The notes below the pieces were generated by a model that was given only the letters and a program-made list of their open reading frames with translations, had not been told where the DNA came from and ran no database searches. Positions 6,303 to 57,363 of a stretch of DNA of 64,000 nucleotides are shown in pieces. The position numbers and the translations under genes are program-made. Source of the DNA: Selaginella moellendorffii (Eukaryota; Plantae; Lycopodiophyta). The stretch spans positions 1,279,430-1,343,429 of the forward strand of contig NW_003314297.1 of the NCBI RefSeq assembly GCF_000143415.4, in the 5' to 3' direction. The stretch's first letter is position 1. Each line of letters starts with the position of its first letter.

Positions 6303-6438
6303 CCCGGATCCATAAACCCTAAAATGCGCCACTCGGTATATCCTCCATCCAGTTGAAAGAAGGTATATCCAGTTTTATAAGGTTTAGACGAGGGTTATTT
6401 GATCAGCTCGTGGAAATTTTGACGCATCGAGGAGCGCC

Positions 6439-8389: not shown

Positions 8390-10723
8390 CTAGCCATGTA
8401 CGTAAGAGCCAAGCGCGCTCGTCACGAGAGAGCGTGCCAGCCACAGCAATCCAGGATCATTGGTCTTGAGCACAAAGCTTGACATCGCTGCTTCTTCGGC
8501 AAATCCAACCATTTTAAGCAGCTCAATCGCTCCTGTAAAAACAAAACTAAGGACACTCGAAGACCATACAAGCTTTAGACTGATTACCGGCAAACTTTGC
8601 AACACGCTCCTGGAAGACGGGATTGTTCTGCCATGGAACAGCACACGTTAGCAACAAAAACGAAGAAAGTATCGCTTTCATTCACTCGCCTTCTTTATAC
8701 GCCGGTACTTCTCTTCGTTTGGATGCTCCATGACGTTACTGAACAAGCAAGAGCATAGTGAGAAAACAAATGAGAAACCAAAGCTAAACCTTAAGATTTT
8801 CACAAGAGTTTGGAAAGCCATGGCCGCTTCCAAGGGAGTAGCCTGACGAGTAAGCATCGCGATCGAGTCCTCGAGCCGGGAACTAGCAGCAGCTGCTGCG
8901 GCATTGATTCGTTTGATCTCCATGTCCAGTTCTCCCATCTCCATCACTTCCACGTCTCTCTGAAACGGACTTCCATGCCTGAGATCGTCGTCTGGATCCG
9001 GTTCTTTGTGATCTTCTGGAAGTTTAGTTCTTTTATTGTCTCCGTATGCTTCTTGATCGTCTGGATCATTGTCGTCTGGATCTGGTTCTCTGTAATCTTT
9101 TAGAGTTTCCTTCTCGTCCGGGTCTGGTTCTCTGTAATCTTTTAGAGTTTCCTTCTCGTCCGGGTCTGGTTCCCCGTGATGTTCGTTCTCGTCTGGATCT
9201 GGTTCTCTGTGACTTTCCTTCTCATCCGGGTCTGGTTCCCAGGTTTCTGTTCTATATGCGTGCGGTTCGTCTGGATCTGGTTCACTCTCGTAAGCTTGAG
9301 TTTCATCGGGATCCGGTTCACCATCAGGAAATTCTTTGTTATAAGTTTCTTGGTCGTCAGGATCTGGTTCTTCGCTTACTTTATCATCTGGTTTTGAGCT
9401 TTCGGCATTTTCTTTCAGTCTGTTCAATGCTGCGTTGGCTGCTGCTACCTTGACATTCAAAACGGAAGATGAACCTCCACCGAGGCGGTGGCCTTTGCGC
9501 AAGACCTCTGAATTATCCTCAATACTATCTGGAACTTGGTGTTTCATGCCGCTTAGACTTTGGCCTCGCGATCTTGTCCAGTCAAGCTCAAGCGACTCTT
9601 TGTTAAGCTGAAACAAGAAGGATAAGCAATGAGATTGAACCAAAGGAGAAATGTTTACCAGTTTGTCCAGTTGATGGAAATTCTCATCGTGTTCATCATG
9701 TACCATATGCGCCTGAACATAGAACACAGAAGGGTGTTTGTCGGTTGCATATCACAGAAGATCAAGTTTATCTCACCAGTTCATGAAGTAAAGTCTTTCT
9801 TATGGATTCATACTTCCGAAAACCCTTCAAGTCATCTGTTCGAAGACGTAGAGAGATCTCTTCTCCGCGATTCTGCAAAACTATGGAGCTCAACAACAGG
9901 TTCATCGCATGCTTTCGAATTACCTTGTTGAATCCGAGAAGACACTTGGGACTGATTCCGACCAATCCCTCGGGTGCCATTTCACTAAAAACTCCCACTC
10001 GCCATCGATACTGAAAACAAAGTAAAGATCAATCCTTCCGAAGGCATAGAAAAATGCACCTTGTTCATTATGGCGATGATGCCTCTGTCACTAGCCAAGG
10101 CATGCAAGAGCTCGAGAGCTTTCGGAGGTGGTGGAGTCATCTACGAACACCAGCACAAAAATTCCGCGACAATCCATCAAAAACAAAGTACCTGTACGCC
10201 AGGAAGATGAAGAGTTTTAAAGTCTTGAAACGTATAGGGGCCGGCAGGGAGTTTTCCCGTAGCAGAAGCCGAGGAAGCTCGTCGCCGAGCTCGTTCCTCC
10301 TCTTCCTCAAATCCAAGGCTTCTAGTGTCCTTCTGTAAAGCTCCCGAGACTTCCACCGTCTCGTGAGGGAGTGCTCCCATCACACGTAAAACCTTTCCCT
10401 GGAAAGCGAACAATAGAAGCTTTGTAAGCATGGAGGAAGCCAGCGAGCGAACGAAAGAAAAAAAGAGAAACCTCTTCGATCCCACACTCTCCAAGAGATA
10501 GCATGGCGCATTCCTCGCTGAAGGGCTCCAGCGCTCCACGGGCACCTCGAGGAACCAGCAGCTTCATTGTCTGCGGGGAAATCCCAGTAGCCGACTGTAG
10601 CTCCTGCCCCAATTCCCGCAGCGTCGAGCTCGCCGTGATCGCCAGCACGAATTCCTTTCCTCGGTACGTGAACCTCAAGCGCTGCTGCCGCGGCGCCGCC
10701 TCTCGATCCACCTCCATCTCCAT
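8390..10723 (-). CDS. Ubiquitin-like + WLM metalloprotease + PUB domain protein (WSS1B-like)
   Basis: N-terminal UBL; LLGFNKNRGEEISLRLRTDDLKGFRKYESIRKTLLHEL|AH (HExxH split by an intron); PUB-like NVMEHPNEEKYRRIKK and DPGLLWLARS. Confidence 0.9.
8980..9375 (-). repeat. Coding acidic EPDPD repeat array (about 9 copies, including a perfect 42-bp tandem duplication)
   Basis: EPDPD recurs about 9 times; EPDPDEKETLKDYR occurs twice in tandem. Confidence 0.9.
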
Positions 10724-10746
10724 CGCCACTGGACCCAAACCTTCCC

Positions 10747-13314: not shown

Positions 13315-13396
13315 CACTGGGCACCTTCCATTTTAGGGTTCTTCGCTCCAAGGAAAGGGTTTAAGGGGTTTAAGACAGAAATGTTTTAGGGTCTTC

Positions 13397-15045
13397 ATGC
13401 TCGCCCTGGGCAGCCGATTTCTTCGTCCCGGTCTTCGTTTACAGTGCGGATCTGGTCCTCAGCATCGGCATTGCATTGCGACTACGGTGAGTTTGAGATA
13501 CGGCTCGACCGCTTTCGATTGATCTCGTCTCTCTGACAGGCGAGCATGGTTTCCAAGCCATTTGTGTGGACTCCAAATTTTATTCCAGTGGAACACGACG
13601 ACATTTCAGAGTTTCCAGAGAGTAAGAAGAGAGAACGAAGAAAACGATCGCATTGTCACGAATTTTGATTTTGCAGCTGGAAGCTTTCGAGTGGTTTCAT
13701 ACAACATTCTTGCACAAGTAGTGATTTAAATCTTTTTTCTTAGCTTCGATCGATCGAAACGTTTTGTGTTCTTGTTCTTTTGCAGGTCTATGTGAAGAGT
13801 TCGCTGTTCCCTCATTCGCCATCCTTGTGTTTGAAGTAAGTTTCTCATCATTTTCTTGTCAAGTTTTTGCATCGCCGAGCATTTCTTTCGAAGGTGGAAG
13901 ACGCGCTCAGAGCAAGTTCTATCGCGTCTTTTGTCTCTGGACGCTGATCTCCTTTGTCTCCAGGTTTGCGTTCGTTTATTCTGTAAGCTCAAAGCCTCCC
14001 TCTTCGTTTTCTTTGCAGGAGCTAGACGAATTTGAGAGCTTCTACAAGCCTCTCCTTGAAAGCAAAGGCTACTCTAGCATCTACGTACAGAGAAGTGGCA
14101 AGAAACGCGATGGCTGCGGCATCATCTACAAGGCCAAATGGTTAGCCTCGGATTGATTTTGCGAGGTTTGTTTGATATTTCATTCTACTCAGGTGCCAGC
14201 TGCTAAAACAACAGTTTCTCGACTATAACGACATCGCGCCTGATGAAACCACAGCCGGAAGAGCGTCGGAATCCGTCGGTATATATCCACACACGCCGAT
14301 GTATTGTCTCTGATTTCTCAGTTCCAGAGGAAGAGAACAACAGAGATGTGAGCGATCCACGCGTGCGCTTTCGAAGGAACTGTGTTGGAATTTTTTCGGC
14401 CTTTCGCTTCAATCACGCGCCTAGTAACATTGTTGTGATTGCAAACACGCACCTATACTGGTAAGATAGTTCTGCCGAGTTCTTTATATCCTTTTTCTTT
14501 CCCAGGGATCCAGCGCTGCAAGACGTGAAACTCGCACAAGCCAAGTACCTGCTTGCAAAGCTCTTGCAGTTCGAGAAGGAGATATCTCAAGAATTCAACT
14601 CCAATCCTGTCGTTCTAGTCGCAGGGGATTTCAACTCCACTCCGGGTGATCGGGTAAAGTCTTTCATTCAAAGCTTGGAAAATGGAACAAATGCCGTCTT
14701 CTCTCTTCTCAGGTGTACAACTATATCACCTCCGGGCGTCGCAACTCCGGCCCCGACGTCGAGCTCTCTAGTTTCAAGGTGCCCGACTTGGAGAGCTTGA
14801 AAGTCCCAGCGATCCCACTCGACAGCCTGTACGCCGCTGCACAAGGCGAGCCAGCGTTCACGAACTGCACCCCGGATTTCACAGGAACTCTGGACTACAT
14901 CTTCTTCAGTCCCTCGGCGTCCATGAGACCAAAGACGATCTTAGAGGTGCCTCGGCCGGATGCTCCAGACGTCAAGGGAGGGCTCCCAAACCATTTCCAC
15001 CCCAGCGATCATCTTCCCATAGGAGCGGACTTCAGCCTCTCGTGA
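13397..15045 (+). CDS. CCR4/Angel/PDE12-family EEP phosphoesterase (CCR4 homolog 4-like), copy A, with putative transit-peptide exon
   Basis: FRVVSYNILAQ, LCLQE, RDGCGI, IANTHLYWDP, AGDFNS, GTLDYIF, PSDHLPI; exon 1 MLALGSRFLRPGLRLQC. Confidence 0.9.
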
Positions 15046-15073
15046 AGAAGCAGCTCGTCCAGCAAACCAAAGC

Positions 15074-16465
15074 TTATCTTCGCTCCTTGAAGAACGGGTG
15101 TCTTAGAGCTTCTTTCGCTGTCAGCCGATCGGAGGCTCCATATCTAAGGAGACCCTCGAGCAAGTCTGTCAAGGAACTGGCAGAGTGCTCGACATGCAGT
15201 TGTACAAGCTCCTATTGAGGGAAAAACACAGACATGAACGGGAAGGAGTTTTTATTTTTCAATGTGTACACTACCTTGAGCCGTGGTAACCTTTTCACTG
15301 TCCGGATACTCTCGAGAGAAGAGGCTGCATCGGGCCAGTTTAGTTCCCTCCCGTTTTTGAAGTACTTCTGAGCTTTTCTACTGTAGAAAGCACCGTGGGA
15401 TGAGCCACAAGGTTTATAGATCCAGTACAAATCCGACTTACTCTACGTTATCGATTATGCGTCTGGGAATGGGACCGAGAATTCTTTCCATCATTGCCAG
15501 GTGCTCGAGATTTTCGTGAGTCTGAAACAATGGATCTCCCTGGAAGCAGCCAAGAAATATGAGATTAATGGACTTTGCAGTTTTCTTACCGAGAAAAGCT
15601 CCACTAAGATGCAACCAACGCTCCACAAATCACACGCGTACGACCATCCAAGGCCTAGAAAATATGTATTGTCAAGATAACACTTAAGCAAAAGAAACAC
15701 CCAACGTACCCAGGATGATCTCGGGTGCTCTATATTGCCTTGTAGACACTATGGACGAGTGGTGCTGGTTTTCAAACGTCGCACTCCCAAAATCTATCAG
15801 CCTTATTTCAGCTGATGTCGGTGTCCTGGTTAAGTGTTTATCCAGTCGAGCAGACTGTAACGGAAAAAGTGTTAATATTACTAGAAACGATCTAACAAAA
15901 TGCACTACCTTGTAGTCGAGTGTCTTCACGTATGCCGAAGAGACCAGCAGTATGTTCTCCGGTTTTAAATCAGTATGAATCAAAGATAGCTCATGTAAGT
16001 CTATTAAAACAGGAAGCAAACAACAGTGCATCAATAACACGGGAGCTATAAACGAAAACATCAAACGCGGCATACATGCTACAGAATTCAAAAGCTGCCA
16101 GCCGACATGTTCTATCGAGAATGGCCGGTAGCTATTCTTTTTCAGGAAATCGTACAGGCTTGGTCCAAGCTTTTCCGACACCTAAGTTCGCCAGTAAGTT
16201 TAGATGATGGTAAGGAAAATAAAATAAAATCGAGAAACTTACGATGCAGACATGATTCCGGTAATCGAACCACTCTTTCATCTGAAGACAGCCACTGCAA
16301 ACAAAGGCTAAGAACTTTATGATGCTTAGTTGCAAGCTTTACCGTTTGCCATTCTTGTCATGCTTTTGAAGTGCTTTTAGAACGTCAATTTCAATCAGAG
16401 TGGCTTCTCTGTATTTTGGGACGTTTCTTATAACTTTAATGGCCACAAACTCCTGATACTTCCGG
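15074..16465 (-). pseudogene. 5'-truncated duplicate of the AFC/LAMMER kinase
   Basis: [19 protein letters not shown]; breaks off mid-exon at 16465, losing the N-terminus and Gly-loop; 9-bp deletion (RDI) relative to the intact copy. Confidence 0.85.
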
Positions 16466-16949
16466 CTTTGATTTACTACTAAATTGCTCTCTATGGACTT
16501 CGAAGTTCCTACCATGAGTATAATTCCTTCTTTAGTTTACTTCAAATTTGTGTCATTGAAACTTTTTCTTCTAGGTTTACTAGAAGACGTGGAAGAAAAG
16601 GAGGTGGATGGCCTTTCATCCAATTTTAGTGATTCGAACTGTGATTCAGGTGTGGATAATGATAATGATGCTCTCCTAAAGGTTTGTTTAGTTTCCAGTC
16701 TCTTAGATTCATGATTTGCGATATTTCTAGGCCTTCTATAATTTTTTGCGATTGAGGGGATTTAGTAGTCCAGCTGCATTTAGCACCTAGATACACCTAA
16801 AGATCCTCAAGACTAAGACTATTGTTTACCTTGCATGCTATCTTAGAATTTCCAAGCCAACACTGTACAAATACATGTGGCTTGTTGATCCAAATTGGAG
16901 AAGTGTATATTACAGAGTACCACCTGAAAAGGTACTTTATCACATTCAG

Positions 16950-17750
16950 ACTAACAATGCCATGAATCGAGGTGGCACAAATTGAGGGATTATCAATTCT
17001 TTATCTAGTTGTCAAACTAGAGGATATTAGTTTAGCTGACACCAAATTTGTCAAGCCTTAACCACTCACAATCTAACTAGGCTGGAATAGAGGCACATGA
17101 CAAGGATTTGACGATGGATTTATAAGAATGAGAAGGTTTATACACTTTGCTATATGGATTGTGAGTATTCTTTCATTTTTGCTTTTTTGTCAGCATATGT
17201 GGTAACATGTTTATTGTAGTATATTGCAAGCTTGTAAGCTATGGTTTCTATGTATATGCCATTATTTGTAGGGCAACTCATTATATTGTAGCTTGTGAGC
17301 TAGCTACCTCCAAAGAATCCCATGCAATATTCAACATATGTGCGTAGGCTGTTTGTCAATTTGGAAGGCTCAAGCGCATTCGGAGCAACAATGCTTTAGA
17401 GCACAATGAGGTTGAGAGGGACATGATTTGCTGTTTTCGTCCTGTAGCTAAGAGCTTCATACGTGGGACATCAACACGTAACTAGGTACTCACAATGTTA
17501 GAGTTTTTTCAAATAAAAACTAAATCAAATTTGTTTTACAGCACATAGTGCATTTGTGGAGAGAGTTCTTTGAGTGCATGGTATGGTTTTATAAGCACCT
17601 TTTTAGTCCATGGAAGACATAGAAATTCTCAATGTATCTAATCCATGGCACAACTAGAGTCTACATTGTGTCTTTGCTCCGCACCTCAAGAAGGATATTT
17701 CACACTGGGTTGCAACCTAGAACTTCTATGATGTCCGTCCGTATCAATGT
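16950..17750 (+). pseudogene. Degenerate DDE integrase-core transposase (IS3EU-type)
   Basis: Manual translation: HQICQAL...MTRI*RWIYKNEKVYTLCYMD|LYCKLVSYGFYVYAIICRATHYIVACEL...AVCQFGRLKRIRSNNALEHNEVERDM...KSFIRGTSTRN*|..LWREFFECMVWFYKHLF...LHCVFAPHL; parallels the RRxY..LWHxD..KL..G..RSD.G.EN..SFI.G.S..NQRIERLWR consensus. Confidence 0.75.
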
Positions 17751-18499
17751 GGTAATTATTTTAGACCATCTTATGTTCTTGCAAATTTATTTCAACTGAT
17801 GGAACGAGAGCTTGGGTAAAAATTTTCGTAATGTTACAGAATTCTTTATAAATTATGCTTTTGTAAGATTATATCGGCTGTTGGTGAAAAAGATATTGAA
17901 GACATACCGGGACCTTTTCTCTCCAATGTTGAAGGTGCAACTCTGTCAAAGGTAATCTTTAGAGCAAGAATAGAACAATTTCTTTTAATCTATTTCATTG
18001 TGCTTGGCTACCTTATAAGCTCTTGGCACTGTTTAAAACCAAGCATTTTTTATGCATCGGGAGGGACTCAATTTGGATGAGTAATATTTACTTTATTTGG
18101 ATCTAACAATGGAGTGTGCAATGGCTAATATTACGGGTGTAAATCTACCACTACATCGAGAGTGCTTTGCTTACAGCAACACCAGTGAAGCGACGAGCTT
18201 TGGAAAAATTATACTTGGCCATACTCGGAGAAAATTGAGTGTTCTTTAGTGTACATTTCAAATTTAAATTTAATTCTTGATTTCCTCAATTTTAGGGTTC
18301 CCACATTCGGGATTAGGGTTTACACCAAGTCCCAAATGTGCCTTGGATACAAGGCAATTTCATTTTATGACATGATTTTGTCGATGGTTTGTTCATTTTT
18401 CCAATCGATTCGCATCATCTAATCAGAGGCAAGGCTTCTAGTGCACACTCCCCTAATTGCAAGACCACCACCCAAGCAAGAGCGCCACAGCTACGATGG

Positions 18500-21400
18500 T
18501 GGGTAGCTTCTCCTCGATTAGGTTTGCATAACCAATCCCTTGTGGTTTCCATGCTCGAAGGAAGAACATTGCACGCCTCAACAGTAGTAGACACTATGCA
18601 GGAAACACTTCAGAAGCATGCACCCAAGCACTTGATGTTCTGCAATCAGTACAGCCAACAATCTCGTGAGACACACGCTAGCCACTTGATTTTCCAAACT
18701 CCGCAGCAGGGACATCAACTCCAACAACATCCCATCCACAGCTCCTGACTGCATTTGAGCAAGCAGAGTGCCACCTAACATTGCATACACTGCAACATAT
18801 ATGGAACCTCCAACATGTTTCGTTCTCTTCACCTTCCTTGGAAAGCAGCAGCCTAAGCATCTGAAATGAGCAAGTCCGAATGCCTCATGCCCATGGTGTT
18901 ATTCAATCTGGAATGCTACCACCAACACCAACTACAAGACGTGCTCACGGAAGCCCATATAGTGCCACTACTACCAGCCCCACAACTCCACTAGCCACTA
19001 CAATTCTCGCAACTCCATCTACCAATACAAGTGCTAGTATCTGGCCATCTACCTCCCGAAGCAACAAGCAGTCTAGTTCGGTAAGTTTTTCATTTATACC
19101 CGTCTTTTTTCCATGTGTTTTTCTGAGTAGGGTGAGTTGGCAATGCCACCACACCAGCGAGCTCATAGTTCCCCATCAGCATTCCACAACTACTCCCAAA
19201 GATCAACATCATCATCTAGTGGAGCTTCGATATCTAGATATATTCAAAGTAAACCCTCAGGGGGGGTTGCCATGTGAGACACAGGTATACATGACCTTAT
19301 GCACTCTTCAAATTTTTTTTCTTTAGATTTGTTTGACTCATTTTTGTTTCACTGTGCTAGACTCTCTCACCGCTTGTAGCTGCATTGCACACCTATACCG
19401 ATAACAATCGACAGTCTTTATTTTGTCATCGTGGATGTCATGGCAGTCGATCCAAAGTCATTGGTGGAATGTCTTCTATGACACCCTTGGTCGCTCAGCT
19501 GTTCACCACAGTCTTTGTCACCAAGTGGATTGCAATCCCGAAGACTTGGCATGTACACTTGTATAGGTAGAAAAAAGAGCCATCTATGAAGGTGACGAAA
19601 CTTGATGAGCTAGCAGTGGACCTCCAAGAGTGTCTTATATGAGATGGCTTATACTCCAGTATTCGTTTCCAACCCGGCACGGCCCAACATGTGATTCTAC
19701 TATTACTTCAAGCCTCAGGAATCCAACCTTAATCCATGAACAACCTAGGAGCATTTGTCTGGTGTGCAAGGCAATCCAATAGTGGTGAGGCCTATGCCGA
19801 GTCTGCAAAATTTGGCCTCAACTCTATCCGGCCTTGCTACTGGACTCCTCAAACATCATAGGGAGCTATAGCAAACAAGGCCAATGGCAACTGGGCAATA
19901 GTAATATACCTATACAATGTTATGGAACATCTTATTGACAAACATTGGCTAAGTTATCAAAAGCAAGCCTGAGCACTCGAGGAGAAGGATGTTCATGAAT
20001 GTAAGTCATTATTTTTTTTAAGTTCCCTCATAAATATATGTTATAGTCTTTGCAGTTGTGGCTGCTACAAATATCTTGACTGCAAATGATGATCCCTTGG
20101 TGATAGAGCCATTTCTCCCAAGGCTAACCACGTAGGAACCAAACCAAGATGAGATTAATGAAGAAGAAGACTCTACGGATGAAGAGGACATTCTTCCATT
20201 ATCAAAAGAAACTCTCCCCACATAAGACAATATGAACATCACTGAAGTAAAAGAACAAGGTGATGGTGGGGATGAACCACACTAAGGATCTCTAGAAACA
20301 TCCTTGTCACCAGAGATAGTGGCTCTATGCCATGTGGCTAGTAAGAAGCATTAACATAAATGAATATTTCCTTCATTTTCTAATTTTTGAGTGCAGATAG
20401 GCCAATGGTAGTGTATGACAGTGACGGTAGAGGCCTTGAAGACCATGGTGTGCCTCCACCCCCCTTTCTAGAGGGAAGTAGCTCCACTCCACTTACTCTT
20501 ATGGAGTTGCTTGACAACTTTTCCACAGTAGAGTAAGATAATTGAAAATTGTGCTATTCGAAATTGAACTAATGTTTACATGTAAATTATTGGAGTGTCA
20601 ACAACGATGGATTGATGCCACCAATGCATTTAATAAAGTTATTCAGTTAACCACTCAGAATAGTGCCAACTTCATCATGTTGCAGCATGAGGAGGTTTCT
20701 GCCTTACAGGATACCAGCATAGCCCTTGAGGTGAGGGCATAAAGGGATGTTAAAGTTCTTTCACAGGTGCAATGGTTGAAACACAAGCTTTTTGGTTGCT
20801 TTAGCATAGAGAGCACAAGTGACAAGGAGATGCTAGATGTTGTTACTAGACACTCTAAGTTCCATTGGGCTAGAGGTGAAATATTTTTTCGGCGCGTGCT
20901 TTTTAGCCAAGCCATGCCTCATTAGTAGAATTGAGAGAGTGTTCTCCTTAAGCTTGGCCTTTTAAAAGCATAGTATGAGGGTGTGTTTTGTGATAACACA
21001 ATCTCCTTACTAAAGGAAGCATCAATATGCCTCCTTCAATTGTTGAGTTCACAATAGCATGGTTTATTGAAAAGAGGTACGTGTATTTATTTTTTAGCAT
21101 TTAGTACCATCTTATTGTTTTGTGCAGGGACCTACGTAGGAATTGGGTGGATGCACAACAATTGAGAGAATTATTTGACACTGCTGAAACACTATATTGT
21201 AAGTTCTCCCATTTCTGCATCGAAAAGGCCATGCTTTGGCCATGCTTCGGCCATACAGACTTGCTCATACACATTTGAGGCCATTTCACATTTTAGTAAG
21301 CAATGGATTGCCTATGAATTGGAGTTCCCTCACTTGTCCTTCCGGATTGCACCAAACAATGAATTCAGTTGTTTCCACTTCGCCTTCAATACTAATCTCC

Positions 21401-22660
21401 ACACACCAAATTACAAAGTGGTCTATGCATCTGAGATTGGAGGAGCTTTGGTGTGGGAAGAAGCCATAATAGATGTAGATGAGCCACATGCAAAAGCCAT
21501 TAGGGAGGTTGTTCACCAGATTCCAGGATTGGTAAGTGTAATTTTTACTTAGCTCACTATAGTAACTTTGTGTTACAGATGCATGGACTGTTTGTGCTTA
21601 GGGAAGGAGCCATGTATTGGCATCCCAGGATGCCAGTGCATTCTAAGATGTTGCAACAAGAAAAGTGGGATATGGTAAATCACAAGTTTTATATGCCTCT
21701 CATTTCTATATGCATAGGCTGTCTTTGTGGGCTAGTTGCATTCAAATGTAATACACAGGTGTCTTGCGGGTGTACAATTGCAACATTGGCAATTGCAGTT
21801 GGAGAGGTTCCAAATGAAAATGACTGACAACTTGCCTGAGGAAGATTATATGAGATGGACCTCAAAGCATGCACGCCGCATATTTAGAATCCACTCAACC
21901 AATTGTGAGGTGCATCAAGCGTAAAGGAGGAGGGCAATCGGCACAAGTCTATAGATTCCATTCTAGAGAACTTTGCAATTACCAACTACAACACAATGCT
22001 TGAGTCTAGACTCACTAAACTTGGTGAAGGTTATGAGTAGGCTGTGGAGGCATGTATGGCTGCAGTGGTCTGGCGTTACCTATTCATCAAGCCAAACGTA
22101 ATGGGAGACTTACTTTGAGATGGCTTCCAACACTCAATGTGTATGGAAACTTGTTAGAGGCTTTACAAGAGTCCAGTATTGCTAGGTGGGCTTTCACTCA
22201 TTGGGACAGATGCTTTGTTACAGGTCTTCTGGGTAAGGACAATCATTCCTCCTACGGAGTTCATCAACTGTCTGATCTTTGATCAGGACTTTGGAGAGAA
22301 CTTCCGCAGCTAGATTGTGGATATCATCCAAGGTAACTATTTACTTTCACAAACAACTAAAACTTTTGTATATTTGAACATTTTATAGATATAAGCTCGA
22401 AAGAGTTATCCAAGTTCCTTGATAAGGAGATCCTATTTGGTACATCATCTACTCAATTTCCCAGATTCTCCACATGCACACGAGAAGTTTTCTTCCCTTT
22501 AACATACCCGTTAATGGAGTAGACCAAACACAAGATCCATCAGGCACTCCAAAATCTAGAGAGCTTGTATGGATTGGGCTGATGTTGTGGAAGTACTATA
22601 ATCGAGACACTTTCACAATAAAAATAGATAATTGTCTTGAAGTATGTTTCACACTTTGAA
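18500..22660 (+). pseudogene. Large spliced ORF relic of unknown function inside the transposon (copy 1)
   Basis: Thr/Ser-rich and acidic segments, Cys-rich exon, GT-AG introns, many stops; start coordinate approximate. Confidence 0.45.
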
Positions 22661-23290
22661 AGAGACTCTTTCTAGTTCATTGGTGAAATTAAAGGTAAGA
22701 ATATTCAAAATATTCTACAAATACCCATTATAGGCACTTGTGGCCCTTGGTACCCTTTTGGCTTATGCTTGTCTCACCAAAGGTAGCTTCCAAAGCAACT
22801 CCCAATTTAAGATCTGGGTCAAAACTATCAAGCTTGGGTGTTATATAATGCCTATCCTCACTTGAGGAACTCTCAACTTATTTCATGGTAAAACCAAAAT
22901 CATCCAGGTTTGTGAACTCGTCCTCTCTTGCATCTCGAGCAGTAATATATCCCTCGCTGTCGCTTTCTTTAACAGGACCTTTCCCCCCGGCGATTGGTAC
23001 AACATTAGATGGAGTCTGAGGCTGCCTTGTCAGAGGGATTCTCAAGCCTTGAGAAGAGTAGGCATTATATAGAATCCTTGGTCCTATCCCCTGTTGGATC
23101 CATTGTTGTGCCTCAAAGAAGTCATAGAATCCTCTCCAATTTGCCATGCCAAGAGGAAACCCAAAAACCTCAAACATTGCAAAAGGGTTAGAGTATATAG
23201 GAAACTATCACAAATTTACTTTTACCAAAGTGATCACAAGCTTCCAATCCCTGAAAACTCCAGTTCTTCAGCCGTAAAACACAGCATATA
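20060..23290 (+). repeat. Internal duplication in island 1, copy 1 (matches ~24810-28090)
   Basis: Colinear matches such as gctacaaatatcttgac, gattgggctgatgttgtggaag and gtgatcacaagctt, with mostly transition differences. Confidence 0.92.
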
Positions 23291-23300
23291 TGTAAGCTCC
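22878..23300 (-). pseudogene. RNase H1 N-terminal / caulimovirus viroplasmin (Cauli_VI)-like domain gene, copy 1
   Basis: YAVFYG*RTGVFRDWKLVITLVK|intron|VFGFPLGMANWRGFYDFFEAQQWIQQG matches YAVxxGRxxGIYxxW...V.GF....KxF....EA..F. Confidence 0.68.
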
Positions 23301-23320
23301 TGAGTTTAGACTTCCTGGGA

Positions 23321-24790
23321 TGTCACCTAGCCCAGTACTATTCAAGCCCAAAGACGCTTAACCCCAACTATCCCAAAACCCTTAACCGATTGGAAAAGGG
23401 GGTGCACTCTTGTTCATGGGCCCTTTCCCTCTATATTTGAACCCCTATGGATCGTCTCTCGAATCGTTCCCTTTGGTTGCTTACAATCCATCACGCTTCC
23501 CTGCAAGTTCAAGCCCTCGTGAACGGAAGCTGAAAGCCGCAGCTCTCCCGAGAGCCCCGCTCTCTTGACACCCTACCCCTCGGGTCGAGCCCAGCGGGAG
23601 CAAACTGGACTAGCCAGATGTCAATCAACATATGGTGTGATTCCCTTAAGCCAACCAACAGATTTGGACCTGAGACCGCTCCAATACCAAGTGGTATCGG
23701 AGCCAGGGACCGAGACCGGGACCGAGACCGAGACCAAGGCCGAGGCCGAGACTGAGCCCAAGCCCGAGTCCAAGTCCTAGTCCGAGTCTGAGTCCGAGTC
23801 CGAGTCTGAGAGGGTGAAAGCCCAAAGCGTTTGTCTCCCAGACCCTAGGGGGTTTGGTGAGCTCCAAAAGTATAGTAGGGGGAGGACTGCAGTGGAGCTA
23901 GTTTAGCCAGGAAAGGCCAGTTTGGCCCAGGAAGGCTGTACCCAGTGTTGGGTGATGAGCTGCCCACTGGGAAGTCCAAGACTAGAGTGAACACGAACCG
24001 ACAAGCAGGGTAGCTTGGTGAACTATTCAAGAGCTAGCTCTAGTTCCCCCGGGAAATCGACTGGCCGATGCTCCCAGTCCAAGTGTGGGTGGCACTACCT
24101 ACTTGGATACCTAGCATGGCTCAATGAAACCTTGCTCTAAGCCCATGGCTAGAGCACCTAAAGGTAGAAGGTGGGGAGAGTACCCATGAGGCTCGCGTAA
24201 GGCCATGGTGTTTTGAAGTGTTGTCCCAAAGTCCCAGATGGTGAAAAGGAAGAAGAGCAATCGTCTAGTGTAGTGACCAAGGATATGGTCACAGGGTGAG
24301 GAAGTCCCGAAGGACAGTGGGACTTAGAGGTCGGGTCTGCGAGCCTTCATCCAGTGGCAGTGTTGGCGAACACGGCCATCGATAGAAAAGGGACTTGGTG
24401 GGGACCGGAAAAGAGATGCTGGGGAAGGCTATTCCCCATGTCTGTGAGCATCCTAAAGATGCTAAGGAGTGGATCTGGGTTGATCACTCATGGATGGATG
24501 GCCTAGTCTTTGAGAGACAGGACTGTGATGCAGGTGGTGTTAGACCACCAGTGCGACCAATGTAAATGGGCATGGCCTTAGCATAACGGGCTGAGAGGTC
24601 GGTGGTACCTTGGGGTGTCGATCATGGGATCGGACATGTGGAGCACTTGGAGCAAGTGCAAAGGTTGAGTGGCATGGATGCCATTCTCGGGGCTAGCAAG
24701 CCCCAAGTCTTGAATGGGACTTATGGAGGTTGTGAATGAGACTCCTCCAAGTGGTCGAAGATGCGGTTAAGTGACTAAAGTAGAATGGAA
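23321..24790 (+). mobile_element. LTR retrotransposon remnant: TG..CA LTR-like segment, tRNA-Met PBS, hexamer array, then sequence related to 49320-50370
   Basis: TGTCAC at 23321 to ACCA at 23689; PBS TGGTATCGGAGCC 23692-23704; blocks ccaaaagtatagtag and catggatggatggc shared with the 49.6-50.2 kb region. Confidence 0.7.
23705..23810 (+). repeat. Degenerate hexamer array (GAGACC/GAGTCC)n
   Basis: gaccgagaccgggaccgagaccgagacc...gagtccgagtccgagtc. Confidence 0.9.
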
Positions 24791-24809
24791 AAATTAATCG
24801 CTTACATTA

Positions 24810-27800
24810 TAGTTGCTACAAATATCTTGACTACAAATGATGGTCCCTTGGTGATAGAGCCATTTCTCCCGAGGCTAGCCATGCATGAGCTAAACCAAGA
24901 TGAGATTAATGAAGAAGAAGACTCTGTAGATGAAGAGGATATTCTTCCATTACCGGAAGAACTCTCCCCGCACAAGACAACATGAACATCACCAGAATCG
25001 AAGAACAAAGTGATGGTGGGGATGAACTGCACTAAGGATCTCCAGAGACATCGTTGTCACCAAAGATAGTGGCTCCAGACCATGCGGCTGGTAATAAGTA
25101 TTAACATAAATGAATATTTCCTTCATTTTCTAATTTCTGGGTGCAGATAGGCCAATGGTAGTGTATAACAGTGACGGTAGAGGCCTTGAAGACCATGGTG
25201 TGCCTCCACCCCCCTTTCTAGAGGGAAGTAGCTCCACTCCACTTACTCTTATGGAGTTGCTTGACAACTTTTCCACAGTAGAGTAAGATAATTGAAAATT
25301 GTGCTATTCGAAATTGAACTAATGTTTACATGTAAATTGTTGGAGTGTCAACAACGATGGATTGATGCCACCAATGCATTTAATAAAGTTATTCAGTTAA
25401 CCACTCATGATAGTGCCAACTTCATCATGCTACAACATGAGGAGGTTTCTGCCTTACAAGATGCCAGCACAACCCTTGAGGTGAGGGCACAAGAGGATGC
25501 TAAAGTTTTCTCACGGGTGCAATGGCTGAAACACAAGCTTTTTGGTTGCTTTAGCATAGAGAGCACAAGCGATGAGGAGATGTTAGACGCTGTTGCTAAA
25601 CACCCTAAGTTCCATTAAACTAGCAGTGAAATATTTTTTCGGTGCGTGCTTTCCAGCCAAGCCATACTTCATTGGCAGGATTGGAAGAGTGTTCTGTTTA
25701 AACTTGGCCTTTCAGAAGTATAGTACAAGGGTGTGTTTTGTGACAACACAATCTAACAGCTCCTTATTGAAAGAAGCATCAATGTGCCTCCTTCAATTGT
25801 TGAGTCTATAATAGCATGGTTCATTGAAAAGAGGTACGTATATCTAGTTTTTAGCACTTAGTACCATCTTATTGTTTTGTGTAGGGACCTACGTAGGAAT
25901 TGGGTGGATGCACAACAATTGAGAGAATTATTTGACACTGCTGAAACACTGTATTATAAATTCTCCCATTTTTGCATCGAGAAAGCCATGTTTCGGCCAT
26001 ACAAACTTGTTCGTACACGTTTGAGGCCATCTCACATTCTAGTAAGCAATGGATTGCCTATGAATTGGATTTCCCTCACTTATCCTTCCAGATTGCACCA
26101 AACAATGAATTCAGTTGTTTCCAATTCGCCTTCAATACTAATCTCCACACACTAAATTACAAAGTGGTCTATATGTCTTAGATTGAAGGAGCTTTGGTGT
26201 GGGAGGAAGCCACAATAAAAGCAGGTGGGCCACATGCAAAAACCATTAGGGAGGCTGTTCACCAGATTCCAGGATCGGTAAGTGTAATTTTCATTTGGCT
26301 CACTAAAGTAACTTTGTGTTACAGATGCGTGGACTGTTTGTGCTTAGGGAAGGAGCTATGTATTGGCATCCCAAGATGCCAGTGCATTCTAGGACATTGT
26401 GACAAAAAGAGTGGGATGTGGTAAGTTAATTTAAAGCACAAGTTTTATATGCTCCTCATTTCTATATGCACAGGTTGTCTTTGTGGGCTAGTTGTTATTC
26501 CAAGTGTTCAAATGTAATGTACAAGTATCTTGCGGGTGTACAATTGCAACTGGAGAGGTTCTAGACAAGAATGACCGACGACTTGCCCGAGGAGGACTAT
26601 ATGAGATGGACCTCAAGGCATGCACACCGCATATTTGGAATGCACTCAACCAATTGCGAGGTGCATCAAGCCTAAAGGAAGAGGGCGATCGGCACAAGCT
26701 TGTGGATTCCATCCTAGAGAAATCTGCAATTACCAACTACAATGCAGTGCTTGAGTCTAGATTCACTAAACTTGGTGAAGGTTATGAGTAGGTTGTGGAG
26801 GCATGCGTGGCTATAATGGTCTGGCATTACCTATTCATCGAGCCAAATGTAGTGGGAGATTTACTCTAAGATGGCTTCCAACACTCAATGTGCATGGAAG
26901 CTTGTTAAAGGCCTTACAAGAGTCCAGCATTGCTAAATGGGCTTTCACTCATTGGAACAGATGTTTTGTTACAAATGTTTTGGGTGAGGACGATCATTTG
27001 TCCTGTAGAGTTCATCAACTACTTGATCTTTGATAAGGACTTTGGAGAGAACTTTCGCAGTTGGATTGTGGACATCATAGTGAGGTAACTATTTACTTTC
27101 ACAAACAACTAAAACTCTTGTATGTTTGAACATTTTATAGATATAAGCCCAAAAGAGTTATCCAAGTTCCATCACTTTGTGGTTGATTCTCTACAGTTCT
27201 GATAGGGAGAGCCTATTTGGATCCAAGTTAAGAGACAGGGTACATCATCTGCTTGATTTCCTAGATTCTCCATATGCACACAAGAAGTTTCTTCCCTTTA
27301 ACATACCTATTAATAGAGTGGACCAAACACAAGATCCACTAGGCACTCCAAAATCTAGAGAGCTTGTATGGATTGGGCTGATGTTGTGGAAGTACTATAA
27401 TCGAGACACTTTCACAATAAAAATAGATAATTGTCTTGAAGTATGTTTCACACTTTGAAAGAGACTCTTTCTAGTTCATTGGTGAAATTAAAGGTAAGAA
27501 TATTCAAAATATTCTACAAATACCCATTATAGGCACTTGTGGCCCTTGGTACCCTTTTGGCTTATGCTTGTCTCACCAAAGGTAGCTTCCAAAGCAACTC
27601 CCAATTTAAGATCTGGGTCAAAATTATCAAGCTTGGGTGCTATATGATGCCCATCCTCACTTGAGGAACTCTCAGCCTATTTCATGGTAGAACCAAAATC
27701 ATCCTCTGGGTCTATGAACTCATCTTCACTTGCATCTTGAGCAGTGATATATCCCTCACTGTCGCTTTCTTCAACAAGACCTTTCCTTTCAGTGATTGGC

Positions 27801-28090
27801 ACAACATTAGATGCAATCTTAGGCTGCCTTGTTGGAGGGATTGTCAAGCCTTGAGAGGAGTAGGCATCATATAAAATCCTCGATCCTGTCCCCTGTTGGA
27901 TCCATTGTTGTGCCTCAAAGAAGTCATAGAATCCTCTCTAGTTTGCCATACCAAGAGGAAACCTAGAAACCTCAAACATTGCAAAAGGGTTAAAGCATAT
28001 AGGAAACTATCACAAATTTACTTTTACTAAAGTGATCACAAGCTTCTAATCCCTGAAAACTCCAATTCTTTAGCTGCAGCACACAACATA
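24810..28090 (+). repeat. Internal duplication in island 1, copy 2 (3' part of the unknown ORF plus second Cauli_VI-like relic at ~27676-28093 on the minus strand)
   Basis: Colinear with 20060-23290; different stop codons in each copy. Confidence 0.92.
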
Positions 28091-29092
28091 CATTGGATAG
28101 TTTTGCCCCATGCTTGGAAACCCTTTTTACAAATTTCAAAATTTGAAATGGTTATGATTGGAAAATGTTAAAAGTGTCCATTGTTATCGCTTTTCATGTT
28201 ACTGCATGCAATTGCAACTTCCATATTTTCAAATCTCCTTTAACATGCTCCTTTTGAGAGAACTCTAGGTCCAAACATTAACACTATACACCTTTGTGTA
28301 GTACATAATTGAAATATAAGCCCCACCAATTCATGGAATTGGTTAGACTTCAACTTAATTTTGAGTCATATGCAAATCTTCTAAGCATCATGGTACAAAA
28401 CTAAAGCATTGAGAGAGCTACACTAGAAATTAATGGCAACGAAGGATAAACTCAATGGGATGCATTAGAGATATGATTCCAAACAGTATATATCCATGGC
28501 TTTGCAATGGGGCTAGATGGAGTTCACTTATGCTTGCTATGAACACTATGTTAAAAGAGGTGTGCTAAAAAAGGATAATTCAATTTTTTTGCCAAGAGCA
28601 AAAAGCTCTAGATAAGGTAGTATAATATGCAATTTGGCCGATTGTCCATTTGGTTTGCAACATTAACAACTTGCTAGAATGCATGGGATGAATGGGTCTA
28701 TTGAATGGGTCTATTGAATGGCTCCATTCTATACATAGCATGGGTCATTGCTATGGGCATGATGCCCCATCTGGGGCATAAGGATTGGATATTTGTAAAA
28801 TATTTTATGCTTGTGTTTTTTTCACACTCATAATACACATGGACCAATAGCAGGCATACACATGGTGTGAGTGAAATCTGCCACAGTAACCCTTTTACGA
28901 ATTGCACGCCATACATTTCTCTAGTGGAATGGAATCGCGAAATTTCTCACGGCTACTCGGACTCCACGTCACTGTCCAGATCACCGCAATGTCCTGCAAT
29001 GGCACTGCCACGCGGCATCATGTGAGTGACGTGTTTGGAACACGTGTCAATCATGTATCCTCCTCGCGCCGCGGGGGGCTTATGAATGCCAG

Positions 29093-54531: not shown

Positions 54532-57363
54532 TATGGCATGTTATTTATAAAATGGTGTTGCATGAAAAATACCATACTGTGCAATATTGCATTTGCCAAG
54601 TGGCAACATTTGATTGGTCTATCATAACCATATTTCTATTATAAACATCCAATGGGCATCCAATGTGATCAGATTTCCATACATGTCTATTATGCACATC
54701 CCAGTACATGTCTACTCATCCTTTGATTAGTGTCTGGTGAGGCCTACTTGTTGTTGTGTAGGGCACTATGGTGGAGTCTAGATCCATGGGTATTGGTACT
54801 AAAAAATCTAGGGCAATAACAAGGTAATTTATATTTAAAATAGTTAGATGGTTTTATTTTCTTTTGATGACAGGATTTGTAAGGAGGTTTTGACATATAG
54901 CATACATAATGAAGCTTAAGAAACATGAGTAAATTTCTATTGTCAATTTCAAACTTCTTTATTATAGATAACGACATTTTTTTGCTTGAGATTTTCGTTA
55001 GGTCTCATAGAAGAGCAAGATGGTATAAGTGGACAGTCTATCCCATATGATTTAGACTCTTCTTGAACATTTGAGAGTGATAACAAAGAGCAATACACAG
55101 AGGTATATAATTTCATGTTTAGAGTAAATTATTAAATATATGATTATAAGAATTCTAACATTCCTTGGTTTCTAGATGTTTTAGCAATCCAATTGCTTTT
55201 TATTTGTGGATGCATTTGTGAGACCAAGACAATGGATTACTTAGCATCATATTTACAGATTTCAAATCTAACATTGTATAAATATATGAGGTTCATTGAT
55301 GTAAATTGAAGAGTAAGATACCATCATTAGAGGTGTTTCATCATATCCTCACTAACATTGCCATGAGTCACAGTGATACAGATTGTAAATGGCCACTCAA
55401 GTTGTCAATATTATTTTAGTCAATGTCAAATTTGCAAAGCTTTAGCTATACAAGACCTTATAAGGCTCACTTTAAACTTATTTCTGTCATGCTTTACTCT
55501 AGCAGCATAATGTAAACTAGTATCATATGGATTTTATGTCCATGCTATGATTTGTGGTGCTACACATAACATCATCTTTTACGAGTTATCAACTACAAAG
55601 CAGTAATATGTAATTTTTAACATTTATGCACATGTTGTTTATAAATTTTGCTATCCAAAATAGATTAGAAGCAATCACACACTAAAGGCCAACGATGTGG
55701 AGAGTAGAATATAGACCTCCCAAGCTTCACCTTTTATCAGTGGCACTTCAACACAAAACCAAATACAAAATATCTACTCAAATCTTTTTAAATTTTAAAT
55801 TTCTTATATATATATATACACACACACACATTTTATTTTTTTCACAGCATAATCAGAGCATTAAGAAATAAAGATATTGAACTCTTGCTTAGATCATTTC
55901 TATGCAGTGTTGAAGGTGTTACTTTGCCACAAGTATTTAGTTTTATCTTTTTTGTGATGTTCCCTATGTTAAGAATTTCTTTGTTTTGAACAACACATAA
56001 CAACAATCCAGAATCAAGCATTTTCACTCTATTATACTAGGCGAAATCTAGATGAATAATACCTTTTACTCTTGAATTTATTAATATTATGTGCACTAGC
56101 AAATATAAAAAGACATCCCACTCATAGACTACATTGCAACAACACTATGTATGGCAACTCTAGTCATTAGAAGAGCTCTTGAAAAGTTGCAAATGACCAT
56201 TCTCCATCTAGCTTAGTTATGAATTCTTTAAAATTTATTTGTTCTTTAAGGTGTATTTTAATTTTAAGTAGTGGAATTCAAATGTTATCACCAACTATGT
56301 ATTAATATTATTGATTCACAAATAAAATATAATAAAGCATAATTATATTCCTAGATTGGGAGATTGGCAAGCATGAAGTATAGATTTGAGCAATGTGTTT
56401 AGAATCATATAGCAAATCATAGAAGGTAACAATCTTATCTGAAAAATATACATCCTATAAACTAGTATGAGAGTTAAGTGGCCTTCACCACTTTTAACAT
56501 ACCTGAAAAGTATAGTGTTCCATGAAACATAGTCCCAAATACACGTATGAATGTTGTCCAAGCCCATGTATGTGTCCACAAAGCTTCTACATTTGGAATA
56601 CATGTCAACTACACAGTTTGCGATATAAACATCTTATATAAACCTCCTTCAAGTGGCCTTGTAAATAATATGATTTACAAGAGGTATAACTATCTTCGAA
56701 ACATAAACCTCTTTCAGGCAGCTTTATAAATAATATGATTTACAAGAGGTATAACTATCTTCCAATCTCGATAAATTTCTGTCCTTCTTCTATACATAGC
56801 ATATAGTGGGAAATTTTGGCCCATTCTTCCAAATAAAAATAATAATTAAGTATCTAAGCATTTTGAAATCTCAAATAGTTATATTAACTTCCCCATGAAA
56901 CAATGGAATTCCATAAAATTTCTTGCACTGCTCTAGAATGAGCGTCCAATGTTATTGATAGTTGAAATATATGAAGTTAATCACTTTATTTGAGCTCCTC
57001 AGCCCTTGCTAAATTGTAATAGTGCTCAAAAGCTTTAATCAATTGAAATTAGAAAAGGCACTAGGAATCAGGGAAAAAATTCAAGGCTTATAGTTAGAAA
57101 TATTTTGAAACAATAAATGGGTCTAATTAAATGGTTATGGATGGATAAGGGGCCATTTACATGGCCATGATCCCCACATAATGGCCATTAGATTCTAGGG
57201 AATATCCTTCAAAAATCTAATTCAATTTCATGCGTAATCAATTTCACATAAGGAATATACCGTTTCATATCCAATTTTATACGTAGATTATTCTACTAAA
57301 TGCCCCATGGCTTGTTTTTAGTACAGTCTTTTTTCATGCCAACACCAGTTTACGAATAACATA
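54532..57363. mobile_element. Non-autonomous AT-rich TIR element with TATGG-type terminus (probable IS3EU-like derivative)
   Basis: Left TATGGCATGTTATTTATAAAATGGTGTTGCATGAAAAA; right end reverse complement TATGTTATTCGTAAACTGGTGTTGGCATGAAAAA; splits an IFT81 exon; no clear TSD. Confidence 0.72.
56343..56620 (-). pseudogene. Degenerate PPR fragment inside the TIR element
   Basis: VDMYSKCRSFVD...DYVSWNTILFRYVKSGEG...SILHAC. Confidence 0.65.

What the first reader, a model, noticed from the sequence alone, without database searches (positions are those of the whole stretch)
16950..17750. Hidden IS3EU-type integrase-core transposase relic in a land-plant genome
No ORF is called here. Reading through the stops gives a spliced protein, I*RWIYKNEKVYTLCYMD|LYCKLVSYGFYV...RIRSNNALEH...SFIRGTSTRN*|..LWREFF...LHCVFAP. 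It follows the eukaryotic IS3-like (IS3EU) transposase consensus RRxY...LWHxD..KL...RSD.G.EN...SFI.G.S..NQRIERLWR motif by motif. Many lesions are TGA/TGG/TAG at expected CGA/CGG/CAG codons, which suggests methylation-driven decay. To my knowledge this superfamily is described mainly from animals and fungi, so a plant lineage would be notable.
Basis: partly seen in the sequence, partly recalled or inferred. Interest (0 to 1): 0.85.

Follow-up and report, generated by a model that had tools for sequence, protein, structure and literature searches.

The report
Dead GingerRoot/IS3EU-type transposon copy in Selaginella
The stretch is a real but thoroughly broken transposase gene of an integrase-type DNA transposon, sitting in a clubmoss (Selaginella-type) genome, which is the plant group where this transposon kind (GingerRoot/IS3EU) was already described in 2019, so it is a correct reading but not a surprising one.

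Summary
Window 16574-18238 (+) holds a six-exon pseudogene for a DDE integrase-core transposase (Pfam rva_4/rve). It matches Selaginella moellendorffii gene models annotated 'Integrase core domain-containing protein' at tblastn E values down to 7e-57.

The pseudogene lies in a 12.4 kb, 5'-truncated copy (16464-28913) of an ~8.5 kb transposon family. Eight copies were recovered from S. moellendorffii. The family has ~63-nt terminal inverted repeats, TA..TA termini, a 5-bp target duplication and no reverse transcriptase.

All 12 in-frame stops in the window copy lie where related copies have TGG, CGA, CAG or CAA. Of its 173 private substitutions, 82% are C>T or G>A, enriched about threefold at CG and CHG. 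Two private frameshifts and two mutated catalytic residues (D>N, E>V) complete the inactivation.

The novelty claim fails. The host is a lycophyte, and GingerRoot, shown to be one lineage with IS3EU, was described from Selaginella lepidophylla, other lycophytes and bryophytes in 2019.

Two departures from the described elements are small: a 5-bp rather than the usual 6-bp target duplication, and shorter inverted repeats. Interest is low.

The parts
16464..28913 (+). 5'-truncated copy of an ~8.5 kb TIR DNA transposon. It lacks element positions 1-377, which include the left inverted repeat. Inside it, element positions ~3995-7265 occur twice (20056-23291 and 24817-28274), with ~1.5 kb of foreign repeat between them (23292-24816).
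   Evidence: blastn against the complete S. moellendorffii copy L001:9784-18324 and seven other copies gives 85-89% identity.
16574..16681 (+). Exon A of the transposase pseudogene (acidic/Ser-rich N-terminal part). It has no stop.
   Evidence: tblastn with P0001 gives 79% identity. The exon is conserved in all copies.
16731..17160 (+). Exon B: a helix-turn-helix-like region (..YLRISKPTLYKYM..) and the lead-up to the first catalytic Asp (GAT, 17157-17159, kept). It has six in-frame stops: 16788, 16983, 17028, 17037, 17088 and 17109.
   Evidence: tblastn with P0132 gives E 7e-57. Pfam HTH_22/HTH_17 hits are weak. The stop codons were compared with the relatives' codons.
17161..17219 (+). Intron 2 (59 bp, GT..AG), conserved in all copies.
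   Evidence: Alignment of seven copies. The S. moellendorffii gene models P0131 and P0132 splice it out.
17220..17485 (+). Exon C: the central integrase core. The second catalytic Asp is mutated to Asn (AAC, 17387-17389). Stops lie at 17345-17347 and 17483-17485, both TAG where most relatives have CAG.
   Evidence: Pfam rve E 0.017 and rva_4 E 0.11 on the two stop-free pieces. tblastn with P0132 gives E 8e-31 at 81% identity. Codon comparison.
17486..17541 (+). Intron 3 (GT..AG), with a 9-bp gap relative to four of the six relatives (L003 and L005 share it).
   Evidence: Alignment.
17542..17751 (+). Exon D (3' end approximate): the third catalytic residue, Glu, is mutated to Val (GTG, 17548-17550). 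A private 1-bp deletion between 17604 and 17605 shifts the frame. Stops lie at 17655 and 17718.
   Evidence: The relative P0125 matches Pfam rva_4 positions 36-135 at E 2.7e-18 across this region.
17868..17951 (+). Exon E. It has no stop.
   Evidence: tblastn. Conserved in all copies.
18019..18238 (+). Exon F: stops at 18034 and 18082, and a private 2-bp deletion between 18151 and 18152. The terminal TGA at 18236-18238 is a stop in all five relatives aligned there (TGA in four, TAA in one), so it is taken as the natural stop.
28851..28913 (+). Right terminal inverted repeat, ending ..GCCATA. Its flank begins CATTT.
   Evidence: blastn of the L001 terminal repeats against the window. End sequences. 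TIR length in the complete copies.
55136..56198 (+). A second, much older relic of the same transposase kind (40-60% aa identity, GC 30.5%, CpG observed/expected 0.09).
   Evidence: tblastn with P0132 gives E 5e-31 and with P0131 E 3e-19. Composition.

Best explanation
The region is the dead transposase gene of a cut-down copy of a TIR DNA transposon of the IS3EU/GingerRoot kind, in a Selaginella-type (lycophyte) genome.

Shown for the family:
- It is ~8.5 kb long.
- It is bounded by ~63-nt imperfect inverted repeats that begin and end with TA.
- It duplicates 5 bp of target on insertion.
- It carries an intron-containing gene of at least six exons. The first catalytic Asp lies at least 180 residues into the readable part; the start codon was not located. 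The protein has a helix-turn-helix-like N-terminal part and an RNase-H-fold DDE core with spacing D-56-D-34-E.

Inferred mechanism: the transposase binds the inverted repeats through its N-terminal part. Like retroviral integrases and IS3/IS481 transposases, it joins the 3' ends of the element to target phosphates staggered by 5 bp.

Inferred history: most stops and frameshifts are private to single copies, so the source element probably had an intact gene when the family spread. After insertion this copy was silenced and decayed, mainly by deamination of methylated cytosines.

Shown for this copy: 12 stops, two frameshifts, D>N and E>V at two catalytic positions, and loss of the left 377 bp with the left inverted repeat. 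It can neither make a transposase nor be moved by one.
For: Family identity
- The piece 17348-17482 finds S. moellendorffii EFJ25166.1/D8RR15, named 'Integrase core domain-containing protein'.
- Relatives pass Pfam's rva_4 threshold: P0125 66.8 bits, P0001 44.3, P0132 44.2. Against rve they reach only 31.6 bits, below the cut-off.
- P0132 hits the NCBIfam IS481 transposase model at E 1.2e-6, far below that model's curated cut-off (28.3 vs 224 bits).
- A family profile weakly hits RSV/ASV integrase cores, aligned on the second Asp.

Element structure
- Inverted repeats.
- TA..TA termini at every end seen.
- 5-bp target duplications in 5 of 5 complete copies, three exact and two with one transition.
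- No Pfam domain in 10 ORFs from the rest of the element, so no RT, RNase H or gag was seen.

Decay
- All 12 stops sit where relatives have TGG, CGA, CAG or CAA.
- 141 of 173 private substitutions are C>T or G>A. Per-site rates are CG 26%, CHG 22% and CHH 7.6%.
- CpG observed/expected is 0.43, against 1.04 in a neighbouring PPR gene.
- Private 1-bp and 2-bp deletions.
- Catalytic codons.

Literature
- IS3EU families always have TA..TA termini, lack HHCC, and form one lineage with GingerRoot (PMC10045372).
- GingerRoot occurs in Selaginella and bryophytes (PMC6839031).
Against: - The target duplication is 5 bp. IS3EU is 'usually' 6 bp and GingerRoot is 6 bp.
- The inverted repeats are ~63 nt, against 100-150 nt in S. 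lepidophylla GingerRoot.
- No direct comparison or phylogeny with curated IS3EU or GingerRoot transposases was possible. I found no statement linking Pfam rva_4 to Repbase IS3EU.
- The window pieces alone are below Pfam thresholds.
- The host species is not pinned down. One window PPR ORF (35329-37350) has only ~32%-identical relatives in S. moellendorffii, and none of the three PPR ORFs has an exact record.
- No intact copy was seen, so the mechanism is inferred from relatives, not tested.
Confidence: 0.85

Rival explanations
1. It is a member of the Ginger2/TDD superfamily, another integrase-like DNA transposon group, rather than of IS3EU/GingerRoot.
For: Ginger2 makes 4- or 5-bp target duplications (PMC10045372), which fits the 5-bp duplications found here. 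GingerRoot's own best Repbase match was a Ginger2 element (PMC6839031), so the cores are similar.
Against: Ginger termini are TG..CA (PMC6839031); every end seen here is TA. The only prokaryotic family hit is IS481, and the published tree groups IS481 with IS3EU/GingerRoot, not with Ginger2 (PMC10045372). [quoted passage not shown]
Confidence: 0.07
2. It is a fragment of an LTR-retrotransposon (Gypsy/Copia) integrase.
For: Pfam rve gives weak hits. The best solved-structure hits are retroviral integrase cores at E 0.02-0.05. 5-bp duplications are typical of LTR elements.
Against: - rva_4 scores well above rve, and rve stays under its threshold.
- There is no HHCC motif upstream of the first Asp (inspection of the translations).
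- No RT, RNase H, protease or gag was found among 10 ORFs from the ~8.5 kb unit.
- The unit ends in inverted, not direct, repeats with TA..TA rather than TG..CA.
- The gene has spliceosomal introns conserved among copies.
Confidence: 0.03
3. It is a pseudogene of a host gene, or a domesticated transposase, not part of a mobile element.
For: The S. moellendorffii relatives are annotated as ordinary hypothetical protein genes. The gene has introns.
Against: - At least nine dispersed copies exist, with unrelated flanks, shared inverted repeats and target duplications.
- All copies examined carry stops or indels.
- The gene models are 195-472 aa fragments that skip broken exons.
Confidence: 0.02

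Closest known systems
GingerRoot (Cerbin et al. 2019, PMC6839031), described from Selaginella lepidophylla and found in lycophytes, bryophytes and aquatic animals
   Same: - Host clade (Selaginella).
[quoted passage not shown]
- Mostly TA..TA termini.
- No YPYY/HHCC/GPY motifs.
- Size within GingerRoot's 3.9-12.9 kb range, with much non-transposase cargo.
- Methylated and inactive copies.
   Different: The target duplication is 5 bp, not 6 bp. The inverted repeats are ~63 nt, not 100-150 nt. The family was found here in S. moellendorffii-type sequence, a species that paper does not mention. Sequence relatedness to GingerRoot transposases was not tested.
IS3EU superfamily (Repbase; Kojima and Bao 2023, PMC10045372)
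   Same: TA..TA termini ('always' in complete IS3EU families). DDE core without an upstream HHCC motif. The first catalytic Asp lies more than 100 residues from the N-terminus. Weak affinity to IS481/IS3-type transposases. The element may encode two proteins: copies carry a second large gene model (IS3EU elements encode two proteins, PMC8232023).
   Different: IS3EU target duplications are usually 6 bp. No Repbase sequence was available for a direct comparison.
Ginger2/TDD DNA transposons
   Same: Integrase-like DDE core and a 4-5 bp target duplication.
   Different: Ginger2 termini are TG..CA. Ginger2 is not known from plants, and published trees group it with LTR and retroviral integrases.
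Prokaryotic IS481/IS3 transposases
   Same: The RNase-H-fold DDE core is preceded by a helix-turn-helix region. P0132 matches the IS481 model over positions 76-200 of 284 at E 1.2e-6.
   Different: The score is far below the family cut-off (28 vs 224 bits). The gene here is eukaryotic, with introns, and the element is about 8.5 kb.

Membership tests
IS3EU/GingerRoot | DDE (integrase-like, RNase H fold) transposase core | tested here: met
   Relatives pass the Pfam rva_4 threshold. The D-56-D-34-E triad is complete in relatives; in the window copy it reads D, N, V. The PDB profile aligns on the second Asp of RSV integrase.
IS3EU/GingerRoot | No HHCC zinc finger upstream of the core; first catalytic Asp 100-300 residues from the N-terminus | tested here: met
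   About 180 residues of exons A and B precede the first Asp. They contain an HTH-like stretch and no H-x-H...C-x2-C pattern. This was checked by inspection only, and the true start codon was not located.
IS3EU/GingerRoot | Terminal inverted repeats with 5'-TA..TA-3' termini | tested here: met
   All eight left ends seen, plus one further solo terminus in L005, begin with TA; all five right ends in S. moellendorffii and the window's right end finish with TA (..CCATA). The TIR is ~63 nt, shorter than GingerRoot's 100-150 nt.
IS3EU/GingerRoot | 6-bp target site duplication ('usually' for IS3EU; 6 bp for GingerRoot) | tested here: not met
   5 bp in 5 of 5 complete copies: TTTTT, GCTCA and CTCTC exact, CAAGC/CAAAC and CACCG/CGCCG with one transition each. 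In the three exact cases the sixth base differs on both sides, which rules out 6 bp there.
IS3EU/GingerRoot | Transposase falls in the IS3EU/GingerRoot clade in a phylogeny of DDE cores | not testable with these tools
   No curated IS3EU or GingerRoot protein could be obtained by reference.
LTR-retrotransposon integrase | HHCC zinc finger, adjacent RT/RNase H, direct long terminal repeats with TG..CA | tested here: not met
   No such Pfam domain in 10 ORFs sampled from the rest of the element. The ends are inverted repeats beginning and ending with TA.
Ginger2/TDD | TG..CA termini with a 4-5 bp target duplication | tested here: not met
   The duplication length fits (5 bp), but the termini are TA..TA at every end.

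The most novel reading that the evidence does not exclude
This may be an undescribed family on the edge of IS3EU/GingerRoot, in S. moellendorffii-type genomes, that makes 5-bp instead of 6-bp target duplications. Its source copy was intact when it spread, and its lesions are mostly private. That would give a natural series for asking what sets the stagger of strand transfer in integrase-like transposases. Much less likely, the window could come from a plant outside lycophytes and bryophytes, which would extend the known range.
Probability: 0.4. Interest if true: 0.3.

Novelty: new member of a known kind. Interest (0 to 1): 0.2.

Why it matters
The practical value is mainly annotation hygiene. 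At least 13 S. moellendorffii 'hypothetical protein' or 'Integrase core domain-containing protein' gene models are spliced-around fragments of this dead transposon family. They should be masked as transposable elements.

The locus adds a GingerRoot/IS3EU-like family with a 5-bp target duplication and short inverted repeats to the lycophyte record. It is also a clean example of decay by deamination of methylated cytosine at both CG and CHG sites in a non-seed plant.

It does not change the known host range of the superfamily.

Tried and rejected
- **Word-index protein search with the 60-aa piece 17165-17344.** No candidate was found. The relic is too decayed and the length window too narrow.
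- **Second hit of the exhaustive search (P0002).** This is a repetitive piggyBac-type protein (DDE_Tnp_1_7) matched through six lysine-rich repeats. I rejected it as a repeat artefact.
- **Inverted repeats around the relic in the window.** Only chance-level pairs were found, because the left end of this copy is deleted. The repeats were found only through the complete S. moellendorffii copy.
- **My first reading of the 20056-21243 / 24807-26000 direct repeats as LTRs of a retrotransposon.** This was wrong. They are an internal duplication of the same element.
- **Pinning the species.** Exact look-ups of three PPR ORFs found nothing. A homology search with one of them gave only ~32%-identical S. 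moellendorffii paralogues. The species stays unresolved within Selaginella.
- **Rfam scan of the window.** Nothing was found.
- **Supplementary files of the GingerRoot paper.** None are held, so no GingerRoot sequence could be compared.
- **Literature search for PF24764.** It gave nothing relevant.
- **Glycine-loop search for the 5' part of the neighbouring LAMMER kinase gene.** None was found in the window.

Full report
**What is in the sequence**

No ORF longer than 76 aa exists in 16464-18300.

I searched the stop-free pieces one by one, by reference. Pfam gave only weak but collinear hits. Piece 17165-17344 matches rve positions 12-52 at E 0.017. Piece 17348-17482, the next in the same frame, matches rva_4 (PF24764, 'Integrase core domain') positions 58-102 at E 0.11. 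An upstream piece, 16791-16982, gives weak helix-turn-helix hits.

The window is from a land plant. It holds three PPR genes, one with an E motif, and kinase gene pieces.

**Relatives**

- A word-index search with one piece found nothing.
- An exhaustive HMMER search of 1.84 billion representatives with the 45-aa piece 17348-17482 found P0001 at E 2e-9 and 70% identity.
- P0001 is Selaginella moellendorffii EFJ25166.1 / UniProt D8RR15, 'Integrase core domain-containing protein'. It passes Pfam's rva_4 threshold (44.3 bits).
- A second hit, P0002, is a repeat artefact.
- Searching with P0001 returned 13 proteins, all S. moellendorffii hypothetical proteins of 195-472 aa. Among them, P0125 reaches rva_4 E 2.7e-18 over model positions 36-135. 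P0132 covers rva_4 positions 1-83 and also hits rve at 31.6 bits, below the cut-off.
- tblastn of these proteins on the window gives E 7e-57 (16797-17216), 8e-31 (17222-17428) and 5e-42 (16465-16961). It shows that the homologous coding region runs from about 16574 to 18238.

**The element**

DNA around P0001 (locus L001, GL377587.1) aligns with window 16464-23291 at 87% identity, and again with 24874-28913.

In L001 the homologous unit is 9784-18324 (8541 bp). It is bounded by inverted repeats first seen as 54 nt at 87% and extending to ~63 nt with one gap. It begins TATGGCG.. and ends ..GCCATA.

I fetched seven more S. moellendorffii loci. Every end seen has the same TA termini. All five copies with both ends have a 5-bp target duplication:

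| Locus | Left / right duplication | Match |
|---|---|---|
| L001 | TTTTT / TTTTT | exact |
| L004 | GCTCA / GCTCA | exact |
| L002 | CTCTC / CTCTC | exact |
| L005 | CAAGC / CAAAC | one transition |
| L008 | CACCG / CGCCG | one transition |

In the three exact cases the sixth base differs on both sides.

Ten ORFs from the remainder of the element have no Pfam domain, so no reverse transcriptase, RNase H, protease or gag was seen.

The window copy spans 16464-28913:
- It lacks element positions 1-377, which include the left inverted repeat.
- It keeps the right inverted repeat, ending at 28913.
- It contains an internal duplication of element positions ~3995-7265, with ~1.5 kb of another repeat between the two copies.
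- Its truncated left edge abuts, at 16463/16464, a LAMMER-type kinase gene on the other strand. That gene appears to lack its own 5' part in the window.

**State of the gene**

I aligned the window copy with six S. moellendorffii copies. It is 87-89% identical to them; they are 90-96% identical to each other.

The comparison shows six exons separated by short GT..AG introns that are conserved among copies:

| Exon | Window coordinates |
|---|---|
| A | 16574-16681 |
| B | 16731-17160 |
| C | 17220-17485 |
| D | 17542-~17751 |
| E | 17868-17951 |
| F | 18019-18238 |

The TGA at 18236-18238 is a stop in all five relatives aligned there, so I take it as the natural stop.

The window copy has 12 in-frame stops. 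Each lies where the other copies have TGG, CGA, CAG or CAA. It also has a private 1-bp deletion between 17604 and 17605 and a private 2-bp deletion between 18151 and 18152.

The catalytic triad reads as follows:
- The first Asp is kept (GAT, 17157-17159).
- The second Asp is Asn (AAC, 17387-17389; GAC in all six relatives).
- Glu is Val (GTG, 17548-17550; GAG in four relatives, AAG in two).
- The spacing is D-56-D-34-E.

Most lesions are private to single copies. The source element therefore probably carried an intact gene when the family spread. This is an inference.

**How it decayed**

Of 173 substitutions private to the window copy, 141 (82%) are C>T or G>A and only 15 are A>G or T>C. Per available cytosine the rates are 26% at CG, 22% at CHG and 7.6% at CHH. 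CpG observed/expected is 0.43 in the relic, against 0.78 for the window and 1.04 in a neighbouring PPR gene.

It also shows that CHG sites decay at close to the CG rate.

For this count a majority state of the other copies was computed inside a script.

**What kind of element**

These features separate it from an LTR-retrotransposon integrase and from a host gene:
- inverted repeats;
- dispersed copies with target duplications;
- an intron-containing DDE gene preceded by an HTH-like region and no HHCC motif;
- no RT.

These features point to IS3EU/GingerRoot:
- The TA..TA termini are the hallmark given for Repbase IS3EU ('always') and for most GingerRoot elements (PMC10045372, PMC6839031).
- P0132 weakly matches the NCBIfam IS481 transposase model (E 1.2e-6). 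The published tree places IS481 on the IS3EU/GingerRoot side rather than with Ginger1/2, Polinton and retroelements (PMC10045372).
- A family profile hits RSV/ASV integrase cores only at E 0.02-0.05.

Two features depart from the descriptions. The target duplication is 5 bp, not the usual 6 bp. The inverted repeats are ~63 nt, against 100-150 nt in S. lepidophylla GingerRoot.

Ginger2/TDD makes 4-5 bp duplications but has TG..CA termini and is unknown in plants. I keep it as a minor rival.

I could not place the protein in a phylogeny with curated IS3EU or GingerRoot sequences. None was obtainable by reference, and the GingerRoot supplements are not held.

**Host and novelty**

Between 85% and 89% nucleotide identity over ~12 kb of decaying transposon sequence to eight S. 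moellendorffii loci places the window in Selaginella. The best hits of a window PPR protein are also S. moellendorffii.

The species is not settled. That PPR has no close S. moellendorffii counterpart (~32% identity), and exact look-ups of three PPR ORFs found no record.

On novelty:
- GingerRoot was described in 2019 from S. lepidophylla. It was detected in other lycophytes and in mosses, and explicitly not in ferns, gymnosperms or angiosperms (PMC6839031; restated in PMC9804982).
- It was later shown to form one lineage with IS3EU (bootstrap 99%, PMC10045372).
- An IS3EU-type relic in a lycophyte is therefore expected.
- In the paper library I found no paper that names GingerRoot or IS3EU in S. 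moellendorffii. UniProt already labels the gene models as integrase-core proteins.

I rate it a new member of a known kind, of low interest.

All searches used single stop-free pieces or natural database proteins.

Noticed in passing
window 55136-56198 (+): A second, far more decayed relic of the same transposase kind: tblastn with P0132 gives E 5e-31, aa identity is 40-60%, GC is 30.5% and CpG observed/expected is 0.09. No inverted repeat of the family was found near it.
   Followed up: partly
window 15441-16463 (-): A LAMMER/CLK-type kinase gene (..[11 protein letters not shown]..). Its homology stops at or near the junction with the truncated transposon, and no glycine-loop exon was found anywhere in the window. 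The gene may be a 5'-truncated fragment left by the same deletion that removed the left end of the element.
   Followed up: partly
window 23292-24816; also L001:1-951, L005:13371-14488, L006:10087-11174 and 15816-16919: A ~1.1 kb repeat sits between the two duplicated halves of the element. In S. moellendorffii it occurs once inside copy L005 and twice, about 5.7 kb apart in the same orientation, inside copy L006. This looks like a solo LTR and a nested LTR element, and the target position inside the transposon is similar in both.
   Followed up: no
L001:12206-16209, L004:13548-16250, L003:13491-17512; window about 18500-22450: The family carries a second large gene model (733-787 aa) with no Pfam domain. 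IS3EU elements are said to encode two proteins (PMC8232023). This may be the second element protein or captured host sequence.
   Followed up: partly
S. moellendorffii proteins P0001 and P0123-P0134: Thirteen annotated 'hypothetical protein' models are chimeric splicings around broken exons of this transposon family. P0132 also joins sequence from the opposite strand of the element (window 22752-23000 and 27551-27802).
   Followed up: partly
window 13523-15042 (+); 4119-6332, 10747-13317 and 35329-37350 (-): Neighbouring genes are a CCR4/nocturnin-like endonuclease-exonuclease-phosphatase gene and three PPR genes. The PPR tested has only ~32%-identical S. moellendorffii relatives, which is odd if the window is from the reference strain.
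   Followed up: partly
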